64,000 nt of DNA from Octopus bimaculoides (GCF_001194135.2 NC_068986.1:30069595-30133594), one strand, 5' to 3'. Positions 9,789-60,521 are shown, numbered from the stretch's first letter. The notes: generated by a model from the letters alone, not told the origin. Made by a program: numbers and translations.

Positions 9789-10014
9789 CGTGTGTGTGGG
9801 TGTATATTCTTGCTATGGAAGAACTGTGAGGAATATACACAAAGTTATTGGTTGCACTGCGTGAATGTCAAACCAAATCTACAATTTCAGACATTTTAAA
9901 GTTCACAACCATGAAACAGCTTACAGCCATATAACAGATGCATATTAATTCACACAGGCTGAGTTAATTTTCATATTGATATTAATATGACAATCATTAA
10001 TAAACGGGATACAA

Positions 10015-10250
10015 TAAGGTGGTAAGCTGGCAGAACCTGTAGCATGCCAGGCAAAATGCTTAGCGACATTTTGTCAGTCATTACATTCTGAGTTCAAATT
10101 CCACTGATGTCAACTTTGCCTTTCATCCTTTCAGGATCAATAAAATAAGTACCAGTTACGCACTGGGGTCAATGTAATCAACTTAAACCCTTTGTCTGTC
10201 CTTGTTTGTCCCCTCTATGTTTAGCCCCCTGGGGGCAATAAAGAAATAAT
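10015..10250 (+). mobile_element. SINE family A (tail ...tttagccccctgggggcaataaagaaata)
   Basis: Full-length match to 21581-21816 and 38680-38915. Confidence 0.85.
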
Positions 10251-12548: not shown

Positions 12549-12766
12549 TACTCTTTACTCTTTTACTTGTTTCAGTCATTTGACTGCGGTCATGCTGGAA
12601 CACCGCCTTTAGTTGAGCAAATCGACCCCAGGACTTATTCTTTGGAAGCCTAGTACTTATTCTATCGGTCTCTTTTGCCGAACCGCTAAGTTACAGGACG
12701 TAAACACACCAGAATCGGTTGTCAAGCGATATTGGGGGCACAAACACAGACACACAAACATATACG

Positions 12767-19730: not shown

Positions 19731-20100
19731 TCATCATTTAACATCCATTTTCCATATTGGCAAGGGTTGGATGGTTTGATTAAAAACTGATAAGCTGAGG
19801 AGCTGCACATGGTTCCAATCTGATTTGGCATGGTTCCTACAGCAGGATGCCCTTCCTAATACCAACCACACTATGGGTGCCAGTTACGAAACACCAGCAC
19901 CGGCCACAACTATGATCTCACTTGGCTTGACAGGACTTCTCAAGTACAGTATATTGCCAATAGTCTTAATCACTTGTCACTGCCTCTGTAAAGCCCAAAG
20001 TTCAAAGGCTGCTTTTTACATGTCACTGACATGGGTGCTAGTTATGTTACATTGGCATTGGCCACAACTACAGTTTCCCTTTGCTTGACAGGTCTTGGAC
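19731..20100 (-). mobile_element. Diverged RTE-like LINE 3' UTR
   Basis: tcatcatttaacatccattttccat...ggttccaatctgatttggca...ggatgcccttcctaataccaacc matches the reverse complement of 37150-37309. Confidence 0.7.
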
Positions 20101-21350: not shown

Positions 21351-21580
21351 CTTGGTGTATTTGCAGAAAGAAGGAAATGAGAGAAAAAAAAAGAAAGAAA
21401 TGTGTGTGTGTGTGTATTTTAGCTGTATGGTTATTGTCATTGTTCTTGTTTAACCCAAGGTCAGCCCTGACTGAATGCAACAGCACTTTGATAAAAGGTA
21501 TGTACCCATCCAGTAGTACCCAACTCCATGTGTTTGCATATCAGAAACTATATTGTCCTGACATTGCATATCAGAAACTA

Positions 21581-21816
21581 TAAGGCGGCGAGCTGGCAGA
21601 AACGTTAGCATGCCAGGCGAAATGCTTAGCGGTATTTCGTCTGACATTACGTTCTGAGTTCAAATTCCGCCAAAGTTGACTTTGCCTTTCATCCTTTTGG
21701 GGTCGATAAATTAAGTACCAGTTGCACACTGGGGTCGATGTAATCGACTCAATCCCTTTGTCTGTCCTTGTTTGTCCCCTCTATGTTTAGCCCCTTGTGG
21801 GCAGTAAAGAAATAAG
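21581..21816 (+). mobile_element. SINE family A, well conserved
   Basis: taaggcggcgagctggcagaaacgttagcatgccaggcgaaatgcttagcgg...ccccttgtgggcagtaaagaaataag. aaacta(ta) is repeated at both ends. Confidence 0.9.
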
Positions 21817-24921: not shown

Positions 24922-25702
24922 ATGATTGAGCTAAGAAACCTTCTGAATGGAAAAAGTCAAATGCTGCCCTTCCATTCAAAGAGCTTTTTAACCCAATATT
25001 TAAATATTTAAATGCTATTATTCATAGCTTTATCTAACTTCAAGTTCCACCATTAAAAGTTATATATATACTCATTCTTACTTAGATATTTGCCTGTATC
25101 TCCGCAGCACAGTTCTTCAGTTGTCAGGGAGATATTAAAAACAAAGTAAAAAAATTCTATCAGCTTTGCCAATATGATTCAAAGGAAAACAAAGCAATCT
25201 GTCTGTCTGGTTTAGGTAGTTCACTTTCAGACCATTCCAAAGCACATTTTGCCTTCTGCAACAACTGTTTTTCAAATTACTCACTTTCTGACAGAACGAA
25301 ATTTTAATGTCTCATGTGTATAACATTGATATCTTGCTGATTATGGCAGCTGCCCAACCATGTCTTTGAGCAGATGGCCTAATGTCGAAGTCAACAATCA
25401 AACTGCGCATTTTCACAACTCAGCACTTTCATATCAATTTACACCATCAGGTGTGTGCACATCTTTGTTTGCTTATGTATGCATGTTTTGGTGTGTGTGT
25501 GTGTGGGGGGGGTGCATATAATGAAATTTGTCATACGAAGCGGATAAATGGTGGTGGTTGTCACAGTAGTATCAACTACTACTGCTACTATTACTGCTAC
25601 TACCATGACTTTCTGTTTGCAAATTTGAGAAGGAAGAGCAATACTGGTAGCCTTTTCTACCTTTATAAGACAAATGAATTGAAGAAGTAAATGTAATTAA
25701 TA

Positions 25703-36342: not shown

Positions 36343-37309
36343 GGGGGTGGGTGCGCTGAAAGTGTAGCTGTTAGAATAATAGCCTGGGCAAAGTTTAGAG
36401 AGCTCTTACCCCTGCTGGCGACAAAGGGACTCTCACTCAGAGTAAAAGGCAGACTGTATGACGCATGCATACGAACAGCCATGCTACATGGCAGTGAAAC
36501 ATGGGCTGTAACTGCTGAGGACATACGTAAGCTCGCAAGGAATGAAGCCAGTATGCTCCGTTGGATGTGTAATGTCAATGTGAATACCCGTCAGAGTGTA
36601 AGTATCTTGAGAGAAAAGCTGAACATTAGAAGCATCAGTTGTGGTGTGCAAGAGAGACGATTGCGCTGGTATGGACATGTGGTGAGAATGGATGAGGATN
36701 NNNNNNNNNNNNNNNNNNNNNNNNNNNNNNNNNNNNNNNNNNNNNNNNNNNNNNNNNNNNNNNNNNNNNNNNNNNNNNNNNNNNNNNNNNNNNNNNNNNN
36801 NNNNNNNNNNNNNNNNNNNNNNNNNNNNNNNNNNNNNNNNNNNNNNNNNNNNNNNNNNNNNNNNNNNNNNNNNNNNNNNNNNNNNNNNNNNNNNNNNNNN
36901 NNNNNNNNNNNNNNNNNNNNNNNNNNNNNNNNNNNNNNNNNNNNNNNNNNNNNNNNNNNNNNNNNNNNNNGCACCATTTTGAGCATGGCCGTTGCCAGTA
37001 CTGCCTGACTGGCTCCCATAGGATTTTCGAGTGAGATCGTTGCCAGTGCCCCTGAACTGGCTTGTGCGGGTGGCACATAAAAGACACCATTTCGAGTGTG
37101 GCCGTTTTCGTGCGGGTGACACGTAAAAGCACCCACTACACTCTCTGAGTGGTTGGCGTTAGGAAGGGCATCCAGCTGTAGAAACTCTGCCAAATTAGAT
37201 TGGAGCCTGGTGTTGCCATCCGGTTTCACCAGTCCTCAGTCAAATCGTCCAACCCATGCTAGCATGGAAAGCGGACGTTAAACGATGATGATGATGATGA
37301 TGATGATGA
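36343..37309 (+). mobile_element. 5'-truncated RTE-clade LINE: C-terminal ORF segment, 3' UTR and (GAT)n tail
   Basis: Open frame GGGCAESVAVRIIAWAKFRELLPLLATKGLSLRVKGRLYDACIRTAMLHGSETW...ERRLRWYGHVVRMDED carries the RTE motifs YGSETW-like and LRWxGHV. The tail is shared with several truncated copies. Confidence 0.9.
36700..36970. other. Assembly gap (271 N) inside the RTE element
   Basis: N run that hides the ORF stop. Confidence 1.
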
Positions 37310-37955: not shown

Positions 37956-38679
37956 TGTTGTGATGATGTGGCTCCTCTTAAATTTCCAAGTCTAAGCCAA
38001 AGTTTCAAGCCAAAACTATTTGGCTTCTAATCTGCAAAAACTCTTCCCATGCATTCTCACATCTTCAAAATAACCCAGTGAGAGAAATTTAAAGTTGTCA
38101 TCAAATAGTAATCTTATAACTTATTTCTAATCATTCTCATATTTCAATTGTTACTATTGTATATTTTTATCCAGTTGCTAACATAAACCAAGTTTCCATT
38201 TTTGAAATTACTACTTCGTTCATGCCTTTCCTTTATAACTTTCTGTATCATTTCCTGTATGTTGTGGTGGTAGTAATGGTGATGGTGTTGACACCATGGC
38301 TAAATTTCATTGATGAGTGAGCATGTTGCTGCTAAGCAGTTATTTATATTTTCAACTCAATTTACAACCATTCAGAAGCCAAGGTGATTTAAATCCCAAC
38401 TAGTTAAGATGTATGAATTAACGATAATCGGTTATCAATCTGTTGCTAATCCATAGTTTAGTGAGAGATTGTCTACAGTGACTGATTTCATGAAGAAACT
38501 GTATACTAGACACTGAGAGAATGTTTTGCTTTTTTGTAATCCTTGTAATAGTTATAGGCGGTTGTAAATACATTGTTTTTGGGCTTCTGATTGTAATTCA
38601 GTTTTATAAATAGTTAATGTAAATGCTTTTGTAGATTATTTTAATTAACCGTATTTTTTAATTAATATTGTCACAACAG

Positions 38680-39119
38680 TAAGGCAGAGAGCTGGAAGAA
38701 ATGTTAGCACGCCAGGTGAAATGCTTAACAGTATTTCGTCTGCCGCTACGTTCTGAGTTCAAATTCCGCCGAGGTTGACTTTGCCTTTCATCCTTGTCCG
38801 GGTCGATAAATTAAGTACCAGTTACACACTGGGGTCGATGTAATCGACTTAATTCCTTTGTCTGTCCTTGTCTGTCCCCTCTATGTTTAGCCCCTTGTGG
38901 GCAATAGAGAAATAAGAAACGTTAGCTCGCCAGGCGAAATGCTTAGCGGTATTTCATCTGTCTTTACATTCTGAGTTCAAATTCCGCCGAGGTTGACTTT
39001 GCCTTTCATCCTTTCGGGGTCGATAAATTAAGTACCAGCTGCGTACTGGAGTCGATTTAATCGACTGCTCCCCCCCCCACTCCCCAAAAATTTCAGGCAT
39101 TGTTCCTAGAGTAGAAAAG
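38680..39119 (+). mobile_element. Dimeric SINE family A (two subtypes fused)
   Basis: The first unit ends gagaaataag and the second starts aaacgttagctcgcc. A perfect 17-bp duplication aatattgtcacaacagt flanks the pair at 38664-38680 and 39120-39136. Confidence 0.85.
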
Positions 39120-39997
39120 AATATTGTCACAACAGTGTTGTTTGTAAATCAATCACATTCAAAATAACTGAGGAAAATGATTCAATGTTGTTCAGAAAAT
39201 GATAATAATGCTACTAATATTAAAGCTTTTGAGCTTAAACTGCCTAAAGGGTAATTCATCTCCCCACAAATTAAGTCTCTAAATGTTTCGTATCTTGTCA
39301 TGAGTATATTATATCTGTTATGAACTTTTTATCCATTAATTGGTATTGCAAGCCATTAATTGACTAGCTTTCAGGCTGACATAGATTACTGTCAGTGTGT
39401 AGAGTACTACTCTCTTTCATATCTACGCCTGTAACACTTAAAATACTAAATCATATTTGATTATGCAATCGTATTTGTTTGATAAGGGATTTAACCTGCA
39501 ATTATGAGTTGTAACGGGAACAATTGCATCAATGCAGAGTCACGGTAAACATTTAGAAAAACACAACTGCTGTTGTTTTCATGTTTGCTTCATTTTGTAA
39601 TCGTATCATATACCTTATTGGTTTCAAGACTAACAGTTTTGGGGGGAAGGATGTAAGTCAATTACATTGACCCCAGTGTTCAACTGGTACTTATTTTATC
39701 GACCCCAAAAGGATGAAAGGCAAAGTCAACTTCAGCAGAATTTGAATTCAGAACATAAAGACAAATGAAATACTTTTAGAAATAATACATTTCTAAATCT
39801 CTCAAAGAGACTTATGCAGTAGTAATACGATGAAGTAGTTGTATGCTGTCAACTTAATGTGACAGTCCCATGAAGGGAATAATACTACTGTTGTTTAGAC
39901 CTGGGAAACTGCACCGCTTCCTGTCAGCCTTGATACATTTCTTGTGTCCTTATGTTTACAAGGGGGAGACAAGCACCTCCACCCAGCTAAGCCTGCA

Positions 39998-40040
39998 TCC
40001 AGAGACATGTTTCTGAGTCTTTGTTCATCATCAGTCTGGA
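39998..40040 (-). ncRNA. Type I hammerhead ribozyme motif (copy 1)
   Basis: The minus strand reads TCCAGA-CTGATGA-TGAA-CAAAGA-CTCA-GAAA-CATGTC-TCTGGA. This gives an intact core, a 6-bp helix I, a helix II with one mismatch and a GUC cleavage triplet. Confidence 0.8.
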
Positions 40041-40415
40041 GTAGCATGACCTGCTAGTCGAAGATGCCTGTCAAGCTCTTGTAAACATATGATAATTCTA
40101 GTGAAATACCTTCACTGATTTCAAATTTAGAAATAATACATTTCTAAATCTCTCATAAGGACACAAGAAATGTATCAAGGCCGACAGGAAGCGGTGCAGT
40201 TTCCTAGGTCTAAACAACAGTAGTATTATTCCCTTCATGGGACTGTCACATTAAGTTGACAGCATACAACTACTTCATCGTATTACTATTGCATAAATCT
40301 CTTGAGAAATTTAGAAATGTATTATTTCTAAATTTGAAATCAGTGACTGTATATCACTAGAATTATTATGTTTACAAGAGCTTAACAGGCATCTTCGACT
40401 AGCAGGTCATGCTAC

Positions 40416-40458
40416 TCCAGACTGATGACGAGCAAAGACTCAGAAACATGTCTCTGGA
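40416..40458 (+). ncRNA. Type I hammerhead ribozyme motif (copy 2)
   Basis: TCCAGA-CTGATGA-CGAG-CAAAGA-CTCA-GAAA-CATGTC-TCTGGA; predicted cleavage after C40452 (GUC). Confidence 0.8.
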
Positions 40459-41222
40459 TGCAGGCATAGCTGGGTGGAGGTGCTTGTCTCCCCCTTGTAA
40501 ACATAAGGACACAGGAAATGTGTCAAGGCCGACAGGAAGTGTTGCAGCTTCCTAGGTTTAAACAACAGTAGTATTATTCCCTTCATGGGACTGTCACATT
40601 AAGTTGACAGGATACAACTACTTCAAACGAAATACTGCTAAACATTTTGTTCAGTGTGCTAACCATTCTGCCAGTTTGCTGCCTTGACATCATATATTTT
40701 ATTAAGAATCAACTTCATTTGTTGTACATCTACAACCTAAACACTGATAGTTATCCCACTACATCTCAGATACAGATTTATGCAGTATTTAAACCCTTAG
40801 GCCTATATCTATTATGAACACCATGTACTTCCAACTAATGGCACTTCACAGTTCATATATATTTCCATAATAATGAATACATCATGACAGTTAACTCTAG
40901 CATATACCAGCTAACAAAGGAATCTTTATGTTGTCAACTGGTCTATTAGAAATAGCAACCAAATCTCCCTTGAATTATATCGAACTTTCCTAAAAAAAGA
41001 GATGGCTATATAAGATGATATATTTTTAGATACCCTTAAACAGGCATGATGGTCAAGGCTGGAAAGCCTTTGATCATAGGCCTTCACTATCAGAACTGTT
41101 AATGAGTTAGTACTTATGGGCTTATACTTAGAAGCATTCCAAAGAGTTTACTACATATAAATTTCCCATTAATCAATTTTTTTTGTATCAGTGAGTGAAA
41201 CAACAACCAGCCAATCAATACC

Positions 41223-43461: not shown

Positions 43462-43690
43462 GCGTTTGTGTGTCTGTGTTTGTCCCCCTAGCATTGCTTG
43501 ACAACCGATGGTGGTGTGTTTATGTCCCCGTAACTTAGCAGTTCGGCAAAAGAGACCGATAGAATAAGTACTAGGCTTCCAAAGAATAAGTCCTGGGGTC
43601 GATTTGCTCGACTAAAGGCGGTGCTCCAGCATGGCCGCAGTCAAATGACTGAAACAAGTAAAAAGAAAAAAGAAAAAGAAAAAGAAAAAG
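43266..43690 (+). mobile_element. SINE family B
   Basis: Near full-length, internal (TA)n, (AAAAAG)n tail. Confidence 0.9.
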
Positions 43691-52278: not shown

Positions 52279-52430
52279 TCATCATCATCATCGTTTAACG
52301 TCCGCTTTCCATGCTAGCATGGGTTGGACGATTTGACTGAGGACTGGTGAAACCAGATGGCTGCACCAGGTTCCAATCTGATTTGGCAGAGTTTCTACAG
52401 CTGGATGCCCTTCCTAACGCCAACCACTCC
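52276..52430 (-). mobile_element. 5'-truncated RTE-like LINE 3' end
   Basis: Reverse complement of 37148-37309 with a (CAT)n tail abutting (TA)n. Confidence 0.9.
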
Positions 52431-53760
52431 GCTTTTGATTTGCTAGAATTTAACAAACCATATCTCAGGTCCCAAAAGCCAAATTTTAAGTTTCTCTGGC
52501 TCAGATTTGTAAGTGCACACATTCTGTTGCATGCAAAGAAAAAAAAAAGCTACCCTTGTACAGACTTTATTATAAATTTATTCAATTACAAATTGAAGCA
52601 GCTCTAGTATTGTAAACACAATCAACCGCACACAGTCAATGTATGTGTTTTGCTTGTTTACCAGTTCACTGCAGTATAGTGCTTTGGGGATGACTCCCTT
52701 ATTGCACTGGTTGTTAAAACACATGAAAATCATAGAAAGGTGAGACAACTTGCCTCCAGTCCCATTCAGGAGTGATGGATATTGATAAATTTATATAAAC
52801 CACTGAGGATACGACACAATAAAAGCCTAACAATTTTCTGCATGCGAATGCAAGATATTAAATTACTCATTGTTAACTGTTTGGAATTTTACAGCATAGC
52901 ATGGACATTGTTTAAGACAGACAGACACACACACACACATACACACACACACACACACACACATGCACACACATGCACATACACCTACAGGCACACACAC
53001 GCACATGTGCGCACGCACATGCACATACACACACACACACACACCAAGAAGCACTGTGTTCAAATAATTAATAATCATCTTTCACCTCAGAAAAGATGAA
53101 AATGAAATTAGTTATCTATTGGTGGTTGCACTTCTTGCTTATGTTCGAAACAGAGGTCATAGCTTGGTTCATAGGTTTATAAATAAGTCAAGCTTTCTCT
53201 GGTACTACAGTTAATGTTTATATACACAAATAGATTTTTCAAGAACCAAATAATATTTGTTCAATAAAGACATGATTTTGTTTAAATATAGAGCTGATGG
53301 ATGGGTAGATAGTACCAAGAATGGTAACCCATAATCATTTAGGAAATTAACTAAACATCAAAAAGATTTGGTTTCTCACTTTTCCTTCTCTTTCATATTT
53401 GCATCTACAGCCATTCTTAGATTCTGTTGTGTGGTTACTGTTTATCCCCAAGGTTAGCCCTGGTAAAGGGCTGACAAGGATAAAAGCGTATCCCAGTTGT
53501 GAATACTCCATCTCATTTTTTGGGTGGGAGTATCATAATATATCTGCGAATATATTATACAATGTTTCTTTACTGTTCTCAAGATAGCAGGGTATGATAT
53601 GAGGGGAAATTTGGCTGCTATTTTTAACAGTTTGAGCAACCACATAGAGATTTTCCTGTTAGCTTATTCATTCTTAGTTCTAAATATGTCTTCTACATTC
53701 AGTGCTAGATTAGTTCTTGAAACCAAAATTTAAGCTAGTTAAAAGACATTCAAGCAAGTT

Positions 53761-54048
53761 CATTGCCAGTACCGCTGGACTGGCTCCTGTGCAGGCGGCA
53801 CGTAAAATACACCATTTCGAGTGTGGCCATTGCCAGTACTCCTGACTGGCCTTCGTGCCAGTGGTACGTAAAAGCACCCACTACACTCTCGGAGTGGTTG
53901 GCATTAGGAAGGGCATCCAGCTGTAGAAACTCTGCCAAATCAGATTGGAGCCTGGTGTAGCCATCTGGTTCACCAGTCCTCAGTCAAATCGTCCAACCCA
54001 TGCTAGCATGGAAAGCAGACTTTAAACGATGATGATGATGATGATGAT
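53761..54048 (+). mobile_element. 5'-truncated RTE-like LINE 3' UTR
   Basis: UTR sub-repeats plus the aggaagggcatccagctgtagaaactc...(GAT)n tail. Confidence 0.9.
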
Positions 54049-57101: not shown

Positions 57102-57494
57102 AGGAGTGGCTGTGTGGTAAGTAGCTTGCTTACCAACCACATGGTTCCGGGTTCATTCCCACTGCATGGCACCTTGGGCAAGTGTCTTCTACTATAGCCT
57201 CGGGCCAACCAAAGCCTTGTGAGTGGATTTAGTAGACGGAAACTGAAAGAAGCCCGTCATATATATGTATATGTGTGTGTGTTTGTGTGTCTGTGTTTGT
57301 CCCCCTAGCATTGCTTGACAACCGATGGTGGTGTGTTTATGTCCCCGTAACTTAGCGGTTCGGGAAAAGAGATCGATAGAATAAGTACTAGGCTTACAAA
57401 GAATAAGTCCCGGGGGTCGATTTACTCGACTAAAAGCGGTGCTCCAGCATGGCCGCAGTCAAATGACTGAAAGAAGTAAAAGAGTAAAAGAGTA
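57102..57494 (+). mobile_element. SINE family B, well conserved
   Basis: aggagtggctgtgtggtaagtagcttgcttaccaaccac...gactgaaagaagtaaaagagtaaaagag. Confidence 0.9.
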
Positions 57495-58992: not shown

Positions 58993-59293
58993 CAATACAT
59001 ATATAAACAGAAATTTGATATTTTGGACATCAGATAACACCAGTAACAAACCACACCGAGAAATATGATCTTTTTTTTTGAAAAAAGAGGCTCCCAAATC
59101 TGGAATTTCTGCCAAAAGTAATTCCAATTCAAACACCCTTCCTTCCTCTTTACTAGAGTTTTAGATATTTTTTTATTCCTAGATCCTGCTCTTTGATAAT
59201 TCTTACTATTGTATGATTGATGAGAGATGAAAGAAAATTTTTAGTTTGTAAATATTTACAGGCAATTAAACTGAAAAATAATAAACTTAAATA

Positions 59294-59696
59294 AGTGGCT
59301 GTGTGGTAAGCAGCTTACTTACAAACCACATGGTTCTGGGTTCAGTCCCACTGCGTGGCACCTTGGGCAAGTGTCTTCTACTATAGCCTCGGGCTGACCA
59401 AAGCCTTGTGAGTGGATTTGGTAGACGGAAACTGAAAGAAGCCCGACGTATATATGTATGCATATGTATGTGTGTGTATATGTTTGTGTGTCTGTGTCCC
59501 CCCAATATTGCTTGACAACCGATGCTGGTGTGTTTAGGTCCCCGTAACTTAGCGGTTCAGCAAAAGAGACCGATAGAATAAGTACTAGGCATGCAAAGAA
59601 TAAGTCCTAGGGTTGATTTACTCGACTAAAGGTGGTGCTCCAGCATGGCCACAGTCAAATGACTGAAATAAGTAAAAGAGTAAAAGAGTAAAGAGT
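59294..59696 (+). mobile_element. SINE family B
   Basis: Near full-length with (GAGTAAAA)n tail. Confidence 0.9.
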
Positions 59697-60170: not shown

Positions 60171-60299
60171 AGGAGTACATGTGTGGTAAGTAGCTTGCTT
60201 ACCAACCACATGGTTCTGGGTTCATTCCCACTGCGTGGCACCTTGGGCAAGTGAGTGGATTTGGTAGACGGAAACTGAAAGAAGCCCGTCGTATATATG

Positions 60300-60332
<33 letters not shown>

Positions 60333-60521
60333 TTGTCTCCCCACCATCGCTTGACAACCGATGCTGGTCTGTTTACGTCCCTGTAACTTAACGGTTCGGC
60401 AAAAGAGACCGATAGAATAAGTACTAGGCTTACAAAGAATAAGTCCTGGGGTCGATTTTCTCGACTAAAGGTGGTGCTCCAGCATGGCTGCAGTCAAATG
60501 ACTGAAACAAGTAAAAGAGTA
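60171..60521 (+). mobile_element. SINE family B with a 37-bp internal deletion, nested in a family F copy
   Basis: gggcaagtg is joined directly to agtggatttgg. Family F sequence lies on both sides (59870-60170 and 60522-60645). Confidence 0.85.

What the first reader, a model, noticed from the sequence alone, without database searches (positions are those of the whole stretch)
39998..40458. Hammerhead ribozymes on both strands of a 351-bp repeat: candidate octopod retrozyme / Penelope-like element
Seen: two copies (39998-40040 minus, 40416-40458 plus) of TCCAGA-CTGATGA-[helix II]-GAAA-CATGTC-TCTGGA. The catalytic core and GUC site are intact and helix I is a perfect 6 bp. Each copy has a different single mismatch in helix II, so the consensus TGAG-CAAAGA-CTCA pairs fully. 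Helix III is the palindrome ACATGT, too short to fold as a monomer. Established: type I hammerheads with short palindromic helix III occur in Penelope-like elements, newt satellite 2 and metazoan non-LTR retrozymes, where they can cleave as dimers and tandem copies yield circular RNAs. Inference: a copy of such a family in a cephalopod, with a ~351-nt monomer or circRNA expected from multimeric source loci. The base of helix II is U-A rather than the usual G-C. Each strand has only one motif here, so this locus alone would not release a monomer. I cannot say whether the family is already described.
Basis: partly seen in the sequence, partly recalled or inferred. Interest (0 to 1): 0.88.

Follow-up and report, generated by a model that had tools for sequence, protein, structure and literature searches.

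The report
Relic hammerhead-ribozyme retrozyme insertion, inverted pair
Two genuine hammerhead self-cleaving ribozyme motifs sit on opposite strands of an 849-bp fossil insertion made only of a ~351-bp non-coding repeat; this is a member of an already well-described class of animal mobile elements (retrozymes, linked to Penelope-like elements), so it is real but largely ordinary.

Summary
Both 43-nt motifs are at the stated coordinates. A covariance model built only from four published, experimentally cleaving animal retrozyme hammerheads hits exactly these two sites (29.6 and 29.3 bits, E~3e-6). The next best hit in 128 kb scores 11.6 bits. Rfam 15 finds nothing, but it also misses other hammerheads with the same minimal helix III.

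The ribozyme is a canonical type I hammerhead of the newt/axolotl kind. It has a 6-bp helix I, a 4-bp helix II with a CAAAGA loop, and a helix III (GAAACAUGUC) identical to axolotl HHR_Amex1, which needs to dimerise to cleave well.

The locus is one 849-bp insertion (39775-40623) into a SINE-like repeat, flanked by a 13-bp target-site duplication. It contains only a 348-351-bp unit, as 1.09 units on the minus strand and 1.34 units on the plus strand. The two arrays lie head-to-head with their 3' ends outward, which is the tandem-plus-inverted signature of Penelope-like element integration.

There is no ORF, GC is 40%, and the monomer RNA is strongly self-paired (z about -5 to -6). My best reading is a dead copy of a non-autonomous non-LTR retrozyme. 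It is a new member of a known kind. The host organism, copy number, cleavage and circRNA could not be tested.

The parts
39647..39774 (-). 3' part of the host SINE-like repeat that was split by the insertion
   Evidence: BLAST of an intact SINE copy gives query 87-219 = window 39778-39647. Alignment with six other copies agrees.
39762..39774 (.). Left target-site duplication, CAAATGAAATACT
   Evidence: SINE positions 87-103 are present on both sides of the insert. It matches the right copy at 12/13, and the one difference is a CpG>TpG transition.
39775..40155 (-). Minus-strand array of 1.09 units. Read on the minus strand it covers unit positions 150-351 and then 1-179. Its 3' end is outward at 39775 and its 5' end is at the central junction.
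   Evidence: BLAST of the unit against the window; inverted repeats I1, I2, I4, I8.
39998..40040 (-). Type I hammerhead ribozyme motif, minus copy. Helix II is UGAA/CUCA with an A.C mismatch at 10.4-11.4. The predicted cleavage is after the C at 40004.
   Evidence: R1 model 29.6 bits, E 3e-6, full length; sequence.
40154..40623 (+). Plus-strand array of 1.34 units. Unit 1-351 lies at 40154-40504 and a second partial unit at 40502-40623. Its 5' end is at the central junction and its 3' end is outward.
   Evidence: (D3); substitutions listed.
40366..40506 (+). Hammerhead domain with its long imperfect extension of helix I. The arms are 40366-40403 and 40469-40506. An internal loop 1 (5' UAC / 3' U) sits next to the 6-bp helix I.
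   Evidence: Inverted repeat I10; MFE fold of the monomer; side-by-side comparison with axolotl Ax330/Ax353.
40416..40458 (+). Type I hammerhead ribozyme motif, plus copy. Helix II is CGAG/CUCA with a C.A mismatch at 10.1-11.1. The predicted cleavage is after C40452.
   Evidence: R1 model 29.3 bits, E 3.8e-6, full length; sequence.
40624..40636 (.). Right target-site duplication, CAAACGAAATACT. The first two bases (CA) could equally be element sequence, as microhomology.
40624..40685 (-). 5' part of the split host SINE-like repeat
   Evidence: BLAST gives query 42-103 = window 40685-40624; alignment.

Best explanation
The locus is a decayed single insertion of a small, non-coding, non-autonomous retroelement of the metazoan non-LTR retrozyme type. 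The element is a ~351-nt RNA whose only recognisable functional module is a canonical type I hammerhead ribozyme.

Inferred life cycle of the family, taken from the published model and not shown here:
- Tandem source loci are transcribed into multimeric RNA.
- Helix III is only a 1-2-bp stem on the palindrome ACAUGU, so two hammerheads pair with each other (a double hammerhead) and cleave after GUC.
- The self-paired circle or multimer is copied by the RT/endonuclease of an autonomous Penelope-like element.

What the sequence shows for this locus:
- A staggered cut in a SINE produced a 13-bp duplication.
- cDNA synthesis apparently started from both nicks, so both 3' ends face outward.
- Each cDNA ran for more than one unit length, straight through the uncleaved hammerhead site.
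- The two copies were joined head-to-head in the middle.

The result is 1.09 units on the minus strand and 1.34 units on the plus strand. With one hammerhead per strand, and one helix II mismatch in each, the locus is a fossil and not a source of monomers or circles.
For: Hammerhead identity:
- The independent model R1 hits only these two sites (29.6 and 29.3 bits against 11.6 for the next best).
- Helix III GAAACAUGUC is identical to axolotl Ax330.
- Loop 2 is CAAAGA, against CAAAAA in Ax330.
- The loop-1 layout (5' U-N-C, 3' U, then a GC/GC stem) matches Ax330 and Ax353.
- A weak helix II base is tolerated in a validated retrozyme: there is a U.U at the base in HHR_Amex2.

Retrozyme features (criteria from PMC7229834):
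- The unit is 348-351 bp.
- GC is 40%.
- There is no ORF above 50 aa in the unit.
- The TSD is 13 bp, larger than 4 bp.
- The monomer RNA is highly self-paired, with z -4.7 to -5.9, and helix I continues into a long stem.
- The period equals the whole element length, so the element is 351 nt long and not a 3-4-kb PLE.

PLE-type integration:
- A partial tandem plus an adjacent inverted 5'-truncated copy is the arrangement described for PLE insertions (PMC8557442).
- Pairs of hammerheads on opposite strands, 100-700 bp apart, were noted for PLE-related elements (PMC4209133).
- Metagenome contigs L004, L006, L007 and L012 hold hammerheads with the same helix III in the same head-to-head orientation. 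L007 has an exact 13-bp TSD, and L006 and L007 have a one-sided ~37-nt tail.
- The outer termini are at different unit phases (179 and 122), as expected for priming at arbitrary points of a circular or multimeric template.
Against: - Only one locus was available. No other copy of the unit exists in the window, and none could be retrieved from any collection. Multi-copy status, tandem source arrays, core conservation and the true ancestral helix II are therefore untested.
- Rfam hammerhead models do not match.
- Neither array holds two hammerheads, so the defining 'tandem of at least 2' is not met here.
- No PLE RT/GIY-YIG ORF is in the window, so the partner is inferred from architecture and literature only.
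- The terminal partial unit 40502-40623 carries 7 private substitutions, against 0 and 2 in the other two copies of the same 122 nt (binomial p~0.025). This fits a heterogeneous multimeric template, or later gene conversion between the arms, better than rolling-circle copying of one circle.
- Divergence inside the hammerhead (2 of 43) equals the background (17 of 321), so nothing shows constraint at this locus.
- Cleavage and circRNA were not tested.
Confidence: 0.75

Rival explanations
1. The locus is the remnant of an autonomous Penelope-like element. On this view it is two severely 5'-truncated 3' ends (pLTR fragments) in inverted orientation, and not a separate non-autonomous retrozyme family.
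For: PLE insertions are mostly 5'-truncated and often carry an inverted copy. PLE pLTRs carry hammerheads. Retrozymes and pLTRs are homologous in Xenopus. The metagenome comparators L006 and L007 look like such truncated pairs, with the PLE 'tail'.
Against: Both arms exceed one unit and repeat with a 348-351-bp period. In PLEs the tandem period equals the full element length of 3-4 kb. The hammerhead is the canonical type (6-bp helix I, 4-bp helix II). It is not the PLE 'min' type with a long helix II, short helix I and a bulged base. There is no RT or GIY-YIG remnant.
Confidence: 0.12
2. The locus is a piece of hammerhead-bearing satellite DNA, like newt satellite 2. It would have been placed here and inverted by DNA-level rearrangement (segmental duplication, replication fork switching), not by retrotransposition.
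For: The 351-bp unit with a newt-type hammerhead resembles satellite 2. Satellites and retrozymes overlap conceptually.
Against: The insert precisely splits a SINE whose two halves share a 13-bp duplication. There are only 2.4 units in total. The arrangement has 3' ends outward and 5' ends inward, which matches target-primed reverse transcription from both nicks and recurs in unrelated loci with TSDs.
Confidence: 0.05
3. The locus is a foldback/MITE-like DNA transposon, or a generic inverted repeat, in which a hammerhead-like string occurs by chance.
For: There are long inverted arms (259 nt at 95%, 150 nt at 97%) and flanking direct repeats.
Against: The outer termini are not inverted repeats of each other. 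The left end is at unit position 179 and the right end at 122, and the left arm carries 56 extra nt. The hammerhead match is 18 bits above anything else in the window under an independent model, and it shares loop and helix III detail with validated ribozymes.
Confidence: 0.03
4. Exapted hairpin-RNA locus. Read-through transcription of the ~380-bp inverted arms would give a long dsRNA hairpin that is diced into small RNAs silencing the retrozyme family. This is an add-on to the main reading and is not exclusive of it.
For: The arms are 95-97% complementary over about 380 nt with a short junction.
Against: There are no expression data. Inverted pairs are a by-product of the integration mechanism. 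Nothing indicates selection on the arms.
Confidence: 0.05

Closest known systems
Axolotl / newt retrozymes (Rtz331 with HHR_Amex1; newt satellite 2 hammerhead), PMC7229834
   Same: Both are type I hammerheads with a 6-bp helix I and a 4-bp helix II closed by a 6-nt CAAARA loop. Helix III (GAAACAUGUC) is identical: a single A-U pair closing the palindromic CAUG loop. The loop-1 layout is the same (5' U-N-C / 3' U). The monomer is about 330-350 nt, non-coding and highly self-paired. The published ribozymes cleave poorly as monomers and well as dimers.
   Different: The only sequence similarity is the 73-nt hammerhead domain, at 66%. GC is 40% here against 51-57%. The base pair 10.1-11.1 is U-A or C.A here, not G-C. 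Axolotl copies form large tandem arrays (about 120,000 motifs), whereas this locus has 2.4 units in an inverted pair. The host is evidently not an amphibian.
Invertebrate non-LTR retrozymes (Mytilus Mg353, Acropora Amil224), PMC7229834
   Same: The element class is the same: short AT-rich units with one type I hammerhead, TSDs larger than 4 bp, and 170-400-nt circRNA intermediates. Mytilus would be the same phylum if the window is from a mollusc.
   Different: The published invertebrate hammerheads have a more stable helix III (a 2-bp stem plus tetraloop or longer) and cleave efficiently as monomers. This one has the vertebrate-like minimal helix III. There is no similarity outside the core.
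Penelope-like elements and their pLTR hammerheads (PMC4209133, PMC8557442)
   Same: The hammerhead has a palindromic minimal helix III. The insertion architecture is a partial tandem plus an inverted 5'-truncated copy. TSD length is variable. Opposite-strand hammerhead pairs lie a few hundred bp apart.
   Different: There is no RT/GIY-YIG ORF, and the unit is 351 bp and not 3-4 kb. The helix I/II geometry is canonical, not the 'min-HHR' form (long helix II, bulged base, short helix I). No 30-40-nt tail is seen here.
LINE-1 twin priming (from general knowledge, not tested here)
   Same: Both nicks of a staggered target cut prime reverse transcription, giving an inverted 5' segment joined internally and flanked by a TSD.
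   Different: It involves a different RT/EN family, a linear polyadenylated template, and no unit-length periodicity or ribozyme.

Membership tests
Hammerhead ribozyme, type I (canonical metazoan) | Conserved catalytic core CUGANGA ... GAAA ... and a cleavage triplet NUH | tested here: met
   CUGAUGA, GAAA and GUC are intact in both copies. The alignment to model R1 is full length.
Hammerhead ribozyme, type I (canonical metazoan) | Three helices in type I topology: helix I open, about 6 bp; helix II about 4 bp and capped; helix III 1-2 bp with a small palindromic loop (definition in PMC4209133) | tested here: met
   Helix I is UCCAGA/UCUGGA, 6 of 6 paired. Helix II has 3 of 4 paired in each copy, with a different mismatch in each. 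Helix III is A-U (+C-G) on the palindrome ACAUGU, identical to Ax330.
Hammerhead ribozyme, type I (canonical metazoan) | Match to the curated Rfam hammerhead covariance models at gathering score | tested here: not met
   There is no hammerhead hit at gathering threshold, nor at E<=10 on 1.5 kb or 86 nt. Rfam also misses every R1-positive hammerhead with this helix III in L004, L007, L008 and L010. The failure therefore looks like a limit of the models for minimal helix III.
Hammerhead ribozyme, type I (canonical metazoan) | Loop 1 / loop 2 nucleotides for the tertiary contact | tested here: inconclusive
   The layout and most bases match Ax330 and Ax353 (loop 2 CAAAGA against CAAAAA; loop 1 UAC/U against UGC/U and UUC/U). 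The published contact positions are in figures that I could not read.
Hammerhead ribozyme, type I (canonical metazoan) | Mg2+-dependent self-cleavage after C17 | not testable with these tools
   This needs in vitro transcription of monomer and dimer constructs.
Metazoan non-LTR retrozyme (PMC7229834) | Type I hammerhead inside a 150-450-bp unit of low GC (<45-50%), non-coding, without LTRs | tested here: met
   The unit is 348-351 bp. GC is 0.40. The longest ORF is 50 aa and has no homologue. PBS and PPT were not examined.
Metazoan non-LTR retrozyme (PMC7229834) | Head-to-tail tandem of two or more units, so that two hammerheads flank a monomer | tested here: not met
   The arrays hold only 1.34 and 1.09 units, with one hammerhead per strand. 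The periodicity is nevertheless present in both arms.
Metazoan non-LTR retrozyme (PMC7229834) | Target-site duplication longer than 4 bp | tested here: met
   The 13-bp TSD CAAAYGAAATACT (12/13) lies within a split SINE.
Metazoan non-LTR retrozyme (PMC7229834) | Highly self-paired monomer RNA | tested here: met
   Circular MFE is -101.6 and -108.6 kcal/mol, against shuffle means of -74.7 and -78.9 (z -4.7 and -5.9).
Metazoan non-LTR retrozyme (PMC7229834) | Multi-copy family expressed as linear and circular ~unit-length RNA | not testable with these tools
   The source genome and transcriptome are not available. No copies were found in the window, in metagenome contigs or in protein-indexed collections.
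Penelope-like element (autonomous) | Single ORF with a telomerase-like RT and a GIY-YIG endonuclease | tested here: not met
   The TSD-bounded insert is made entirely of the 351-bp unit. No RT- or EN-like ORF was seen in the window listings. Eight window ORFs were sent to Pfam without a significant hit.
Penelope-like element (autonomous) | Insertion architecture: partial tandem (pLTR) with an adjacent inverted 5'-truncated copy | tested here: met
   The arrays lie head-to-head with 5' ends at 40154/40155 and 3' ends at the TSDs. This matches the description in PMC8557442.
Penelope-like element (autonomous) | PLE 'min-HHR' geometry: helix II of 6-8 bp, helix I of 2-5 bp, an unpaired base 5' of helix II | tested here: not met
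   Helix I is 6 bp and helix II 4 bp, with no bulge. The metagenome comparators do show the PLE geometry.

The most novel reading that the evidence does not exclude
The 351-nt unit would be an undescribed retrozyme family of a cephalopod (or other invertebrate) that carries the 'vertebrate-style' dimer-dependent hammerhead. This locus would then be a clean fossil of its integration: a 13-bp TSD, priming from both nicks, and more-than-unit-length copies running through the uncleaved ribozyme site. That would be direct structural evidence, outside vertebrates, that retrozymes are integrated by Penelope-like element machinery. It would also predict abundant ~351-nt circRNAs in that animal's tissues.
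Probability: 0.4. Interest if true: 0.45.

Novelty: new member of a known kind. Interest (0 to 1): 0.3.

Why it matters
If the family proves multi-copy and expressed, it would add a further animal lineage to the hosts of ribozyme-bearing circRNA retroelements. The literature searched here shows no retrozyme description for cephalopods, only a count of Rfam hammerhead-1 hits in the giant squid.

The more useful point is mechanistic. A retrozyme insertion with a clear empty-site reference (the split SINE), a TSD and the PLE-style inverted/tandem layout supports the hypothesis that retrozymes ride on Penelope-like elements. That hypothesis is still largely correlative. The 2026 preprint states that it did not examine invertebrates.

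The locus also shows that Rfam-based annotation misses this hammerhead subtype, so genome-wide counts from Rfam are likely underestimates.

Tried and rejected
- **Rfam 15.** I ran cmscan on the whole window at gathering threshold, on 1.5 kb at E<=10 and on 86 nt at E<=10. It gave only spurious snoRNA/miRNA hits and no hammerhead. I treat this as a sensitivity limit and not as evidence against the motif, because Rfam also misses the same-helix-III hammerheads in L004, L007, L008 and L010.
- **Finding other genomic copies.**
  - The exact family pattern in JGI metagenome contigs gave 0 hits.
  - Exact look-up of the two ORFs that overlap the hammerhead was not on record.
  - A homologue search with the 50-aa ORF found no candidates.
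- **Identifying the organism.**
  - A LINE-like ORF gave only a 73%-identical anonymous ENA contig and a butterfly protein at 42%.
  - ARAGORN found no tRNA.
  - Pfam on eight window ORFs found nothing significant.
  - 'Octopod' remains unverified.
- **Six-frame Pfam scan of the flanks.** I did not pursue it, because the insert itself is fully accounted for by the unit.
- **Thermodynamic modelling of the 43-mers.** Homodimer and monomer MFE structures pair core bases non-natively. The double-hammerhead cannot be evaluated as a nested structure. Only the -6.0 kcal/mol ACAUGU self-duplex is informative.
- **Readings rejected.** I rejected a chance motif, a TIR/foldback transposon, an assembly palindrome artefact and an autonomous PLE. 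The artefact is excluded because the arms differ by about 5%, are out of phase and are flanked by a TSD.

Full report

Yes. The window reads TCCAGA CTGATGA CGAG CAAAGA CTCA GAAA CATG TC TCTGGA at 40416-40458 on the plus strand. On the minus strand at 40040-39998 it reads the same string with TGAA in place of CGAG.

In hammerhead numbering the plus copy has:
- C3-A9 at 40422-40428;
- helix II at 40429-40432 and 40439-40442, around the loop CAAAGA;
- G12-A14 at 40443-40445;
- A15.1 at 40446 and U16.1 at 40451;
- the cleavage nucleotide C17 at 40452.

The minus copy cleaves after 40004. The two copies differ only at 10.1 (C against U) and at 10.4 (G against A).

A crude core scan finds these two sites and no others in the window.

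**2. Is it more than chance, and is it a hammerhead by an independent test?**

There is no hit at gathering score over the window. There is none at E<=10 on 1.5 kb or on 86 nt.

I therefore took the four retrozyme hammerheads whose constructs and cleavage sites are printed in Supplementary Table 2 of Cervera & de la Pena 2020 (PMC7229834). These are coral Amil224, mussel Mg353 and axolotl Ax353 and Ax330. I aligned them (A2), annotated the three helices and built covariance model R1.

With filters off over both strands of the window, R1 gives:
- 29.6 bits for 39998-40040 (-) and 29.3 bits for 40416-40458 (+), both full length, E~3e-6;
- a next best hit of 11.6 bits, E 0.6.

The model contains no window sequence. 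The helix I and II bases of the window copies differ from the model's yet still pair.

Rfam also fails to report any of the R1-positive hammerheads with the same minimal helix III in four metagenome contigs. I therefore read the Rfam negative as a sensitivity limit for this subtype.

**3. What kind of hammerhead is it?**

PMC4209133 defines the canonical metazoan type I hammerhead as follows:
- helix I of 6 bp;
- helix II of 4 bp;
- helix III of 1-2 bp capped by a small palindromic loop;
- inactive as a monomer, but able to form an active dimer with a neighbouring copy.

The window motif fits this exactly. Set side by side with the published sequences, it is closest to axolotl Ax330 (HHR_Amex1, the newt satellite 2 type):
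- GAAACATGTC is identical;
- loop 2 is CAAAGA against CAAAAA;
- 5' of helix I both have GCU-N-C, and 3' of it both have UGC. This gives the same internal loop 1 (three nt on the 5' side, one U on the 3' side) followed by a continuing stem.

PMC7229834 reports that these amphibian ribozymes cleave weakly as single motifs and efficiently as dimers. It also reports that HHR_Amex2 works despite a U.U at the base of helix II. A U-A or C.A at 10.1-11.1 is therefore not disqualifying.

With two copies each difference is a coin toss. The C at 10.1 lies in a CpG (GACGAG against GATGAA), so C, and hence a C.A mismatch, may well be ancestral.

**4. Anatomy of the locus**

The unit is 348-351 bp (D3, D6). 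The arrangement on the two strands is:

| Strand | Window span | Unit positions covered | Units |
|---|---|---|---|
| Plus | 40154-40623 | 1-351, then 1-122 | 1.34 |
| Minus | read from 40155 down to 39775 | 150-351, then 1-179 | 1.09 |

The two arrays therefore meet head-to-head at 40154/40155, and both 3' ends point outward. The outer ends are at different unit phases (179 and 122). The left arm has 56 nt with no mirror partner at the right end. The termini are therefore not terminal inverted repeats.

The flanks are the two halves of one SINE-like repeat, of which the window holds at least 15 other copies. SINE positions 87-219 lie at 39778-39647, and positions 42-103 lie at 40685-40624. 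Positions 87-103 are therefore present twice.

Allowing for microhomology with the element ends, the target-site duplication is the 13-mer CAAATGAAATACT (39762-39774) / CAAACGAAATACT (40624-40636). Its single difference is a CpG transition. The insert is thus 39775-40623, 849 bp, and is made of nothing but the unit. Its longest ORFs are 48-50 aa and have no homologues.

**5. RNA properties**

A monomer permuted to start at the cleavage site folds into a long, mostly rod-like branched structure:

| Monomer | Circular MFE (kcal/mol) | Mean of dinucleotide shuffles (kcal/mol) | z |
|---|---|---|---|
| 348 nt, from the plus array | -101.6 | -74.7 | -4.7 |
| 351 nt, from the minus array | -108.6 | -78.9 | -5.9 |

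Helix I of the hammerhead is continued by the arms 40366-40403 and 40469-40506 (also I10). The antisense strands give z of -3.4 to -4.7. The ACAUGU self-duplex is worth about -6 kcal/mol.

GC is 40%. These are the properties listed for metazoan non-LTR retrozymes: 150-450-bp units, low GC, no LTR/PBS/PPT, TSDs above 4 bp, and highly self-paired 170-400-nt circRNAs.

**6. How it most likely got here**

The layout is a partial tandem plus an adjacent inverted 5'-truncated copy. This is the insertion signature described for Penelope-like elements (PMC8557442, Fig. 2 legend). Cervera & de la Pena noted PLE-related hammerhead pairs 100-700 bp apart on opposite strands.

A relaxed pattern search of JGI metagenome contigs returned 12 loci, evidently eukaryotic DNA, with hammerheads sharing this helix III. 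They have PLE 'min' geometry: a bulged U, GGCC/GGCC in helix II, and a short helix I.

In L004, L006, L007 and L012 these hammerheads occur as inverted pairs. In every case the minus copy is on the left and the plus copy on the right. That is the same orientation as here. The flanks show:
- L007: an exact 13-bp TSD (TCCAACTCAAAGA) plus a 37-nt one-sided tail;
- L006: a ~9-bp TSD with the same tail on the other side.

The head-to-head pair with a TSD is therefore a recurrent product of one integration event.

My inference for the window locus is as follows. A staggered cut 13 bp apart was made in the SINE. Reverse transcription was primed from both nicks on a circular or multimeric template. 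Each cDNA ran for more than one unit, and the two were joined in the middle. Both arms read straight through GUC|UCUGGA, so the template was uncleaved or religated at that site.

What distinguishes this locus from a truncated autonomous PLE is the periodicity. In PLEs the tandem period is the whole 3-4-kb element, whereas here it is 351 bp. The element is therefore 351 nt long, which makes it a retrozyme-type non-autonomous element. No RT or GIY-YIG ORF was seen in the window ORF listings. Eight ORFs were sent to Pfam, and it found nothing significant.

**7. What does not fit neatly**

- **Uneven divergence among the copies.** Over the 122 nt present three times, the terminal partial unit (40502-40623) has 7 private substitutions. 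The full plus unit has 0 and the minus copy has 2. Under a star tree this has p~0.025 by my binomial calculation. Either the template was a multimeric transcript of a heterogeneous array, and not one rolling circle, or the inverted arms later homogenised each other by gene conversion.
- **No sign of constraint.** Plus and minus copies differ at 17 of 321 aligned positions plus one indel. In the hammerhead they differ at 2 of 43, which is the same rate. The locus shows no constraint, as expected for a dead copy.
- **No monomer can be released.** With one hammerhead per strand, no monomer can be excised from a transcript of this locus.

**8. Comparison with what is known, and novelty**

The class is well described:
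- PLE hammerheads in 2014 (PMC4209133);
- metazoan retrozymes and their circRNAs in 2020 (PMC7229834);
- the PLE origin of vertebrate retrozymes in a 2026 preprint (10.64898/2026.07.22.740005).

Outside the 73-nt hammerhead domain (66% identity to Ax330), the unit resembles none of the four published retrozymes. It is therefore a separate family.

Full-text searches found no paper describing retrozymes in cephalopods. The giant squid genome paper merely counts 235 Rfam hammerhead-1 loci. I could not verify that the window is from an octopod, or indeed identify the organism at all. The window is clearly an AT-rich (34% GC), microsatellite- and SINE-rich draft eukaryotic assembly with N gaps.

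**Verdict**

This is a real hammerhead pair, a new member of a known kind, and a fossil locus. Its modest added value has two parts. It is a clean example of PLE-style integration of a retrozyme. It also shows that Rfam misses this hammerhead subtype.

Noticed in passing
L007:4700-5212; L006:11284-11745; also L004:3989-4548 and L012:2195-2645: JGI metagenome contigs, evidently host eukaryotic DNA, carry PLE-'min'-type hammerheads (CUGAUGA-U-GGCC-AAAUA-GGCC-GAAACAUGUC) as head-to-head inverted pairs. L007 has an exact 13-bp TSD and a 37-nt one-sided tail. L006 has a ~9-bp TSD with the same tail on the opposite side. Rfam reports none of them.
   Followed up: partly
window 38675-38860, 38914-39066, 21575-21800, 10010-10234 and at least 11 more sites: A ~180-bp SINE-like interspersed repeat with a tRNA-like box (GAGTTCAAATTCC) occurs at least 15 times in the window. 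One copy is the target of the retrozyme insertion. ARAGORN calls no tRNA in the window.
   Followed up: partly
window 40502-40623 versus 40154-40275 and 39954-39833: The terminal partial unit carries 7 private substitutions in 122 nt, while the other two copies carry 0 and 2. This suggests a heterogeneous multimeric template, or gene conversion between the inverted arms.
   Followed up: partly
window 36481-36700 (+), followed by an N gap to about 36980: An ORF fragment (MLHGSETWAV...RLRWYGHVVRMDED) resembles, from memory, the C-terminal part of a non-LTR (LINE) reverse transcriptase. Its best database relative is 73% identical, on an anonymous 1.1-kb ENA contig. It has no Pfam hit.
   Followed up: partly
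window 12613-12700, 43540-43611, 57380-57458, 59290-59600, 60225-60493; and 19780-19900, 25575-25700, 36591-37229, 52341-52450, 53753-53983: Two further interspersed repeat families are visible as recurring pseudo-ORF translations (…KSTPGLILWKPSTYSIGLFCRTAKL… and …RLQSDLAEFLQLDALPNANHS…). The window is also dense in microsatellites (TA, CA, CT, ACAT) and has 920 N in assembly gaps.
   Followed up: no
window 40126-40148, 40310-40332, 39775-39797: Each unit contains a perfect internal palindrome, TTTAGAAAT-N6-ATTTCTAAA, which forms a 12-13-bp hairpin in the predicted monomer fold. One copy lies next to the head-to-head junction and another at the left end of the insert.
   Followed up: no
L010:2475-2592: A long hairpin matches Rfam mir-5014 at 64 bits, below its gathering score of 101. 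It is probably just an inverted repeat in the same contig as a hammerhead.
   Followed up: no
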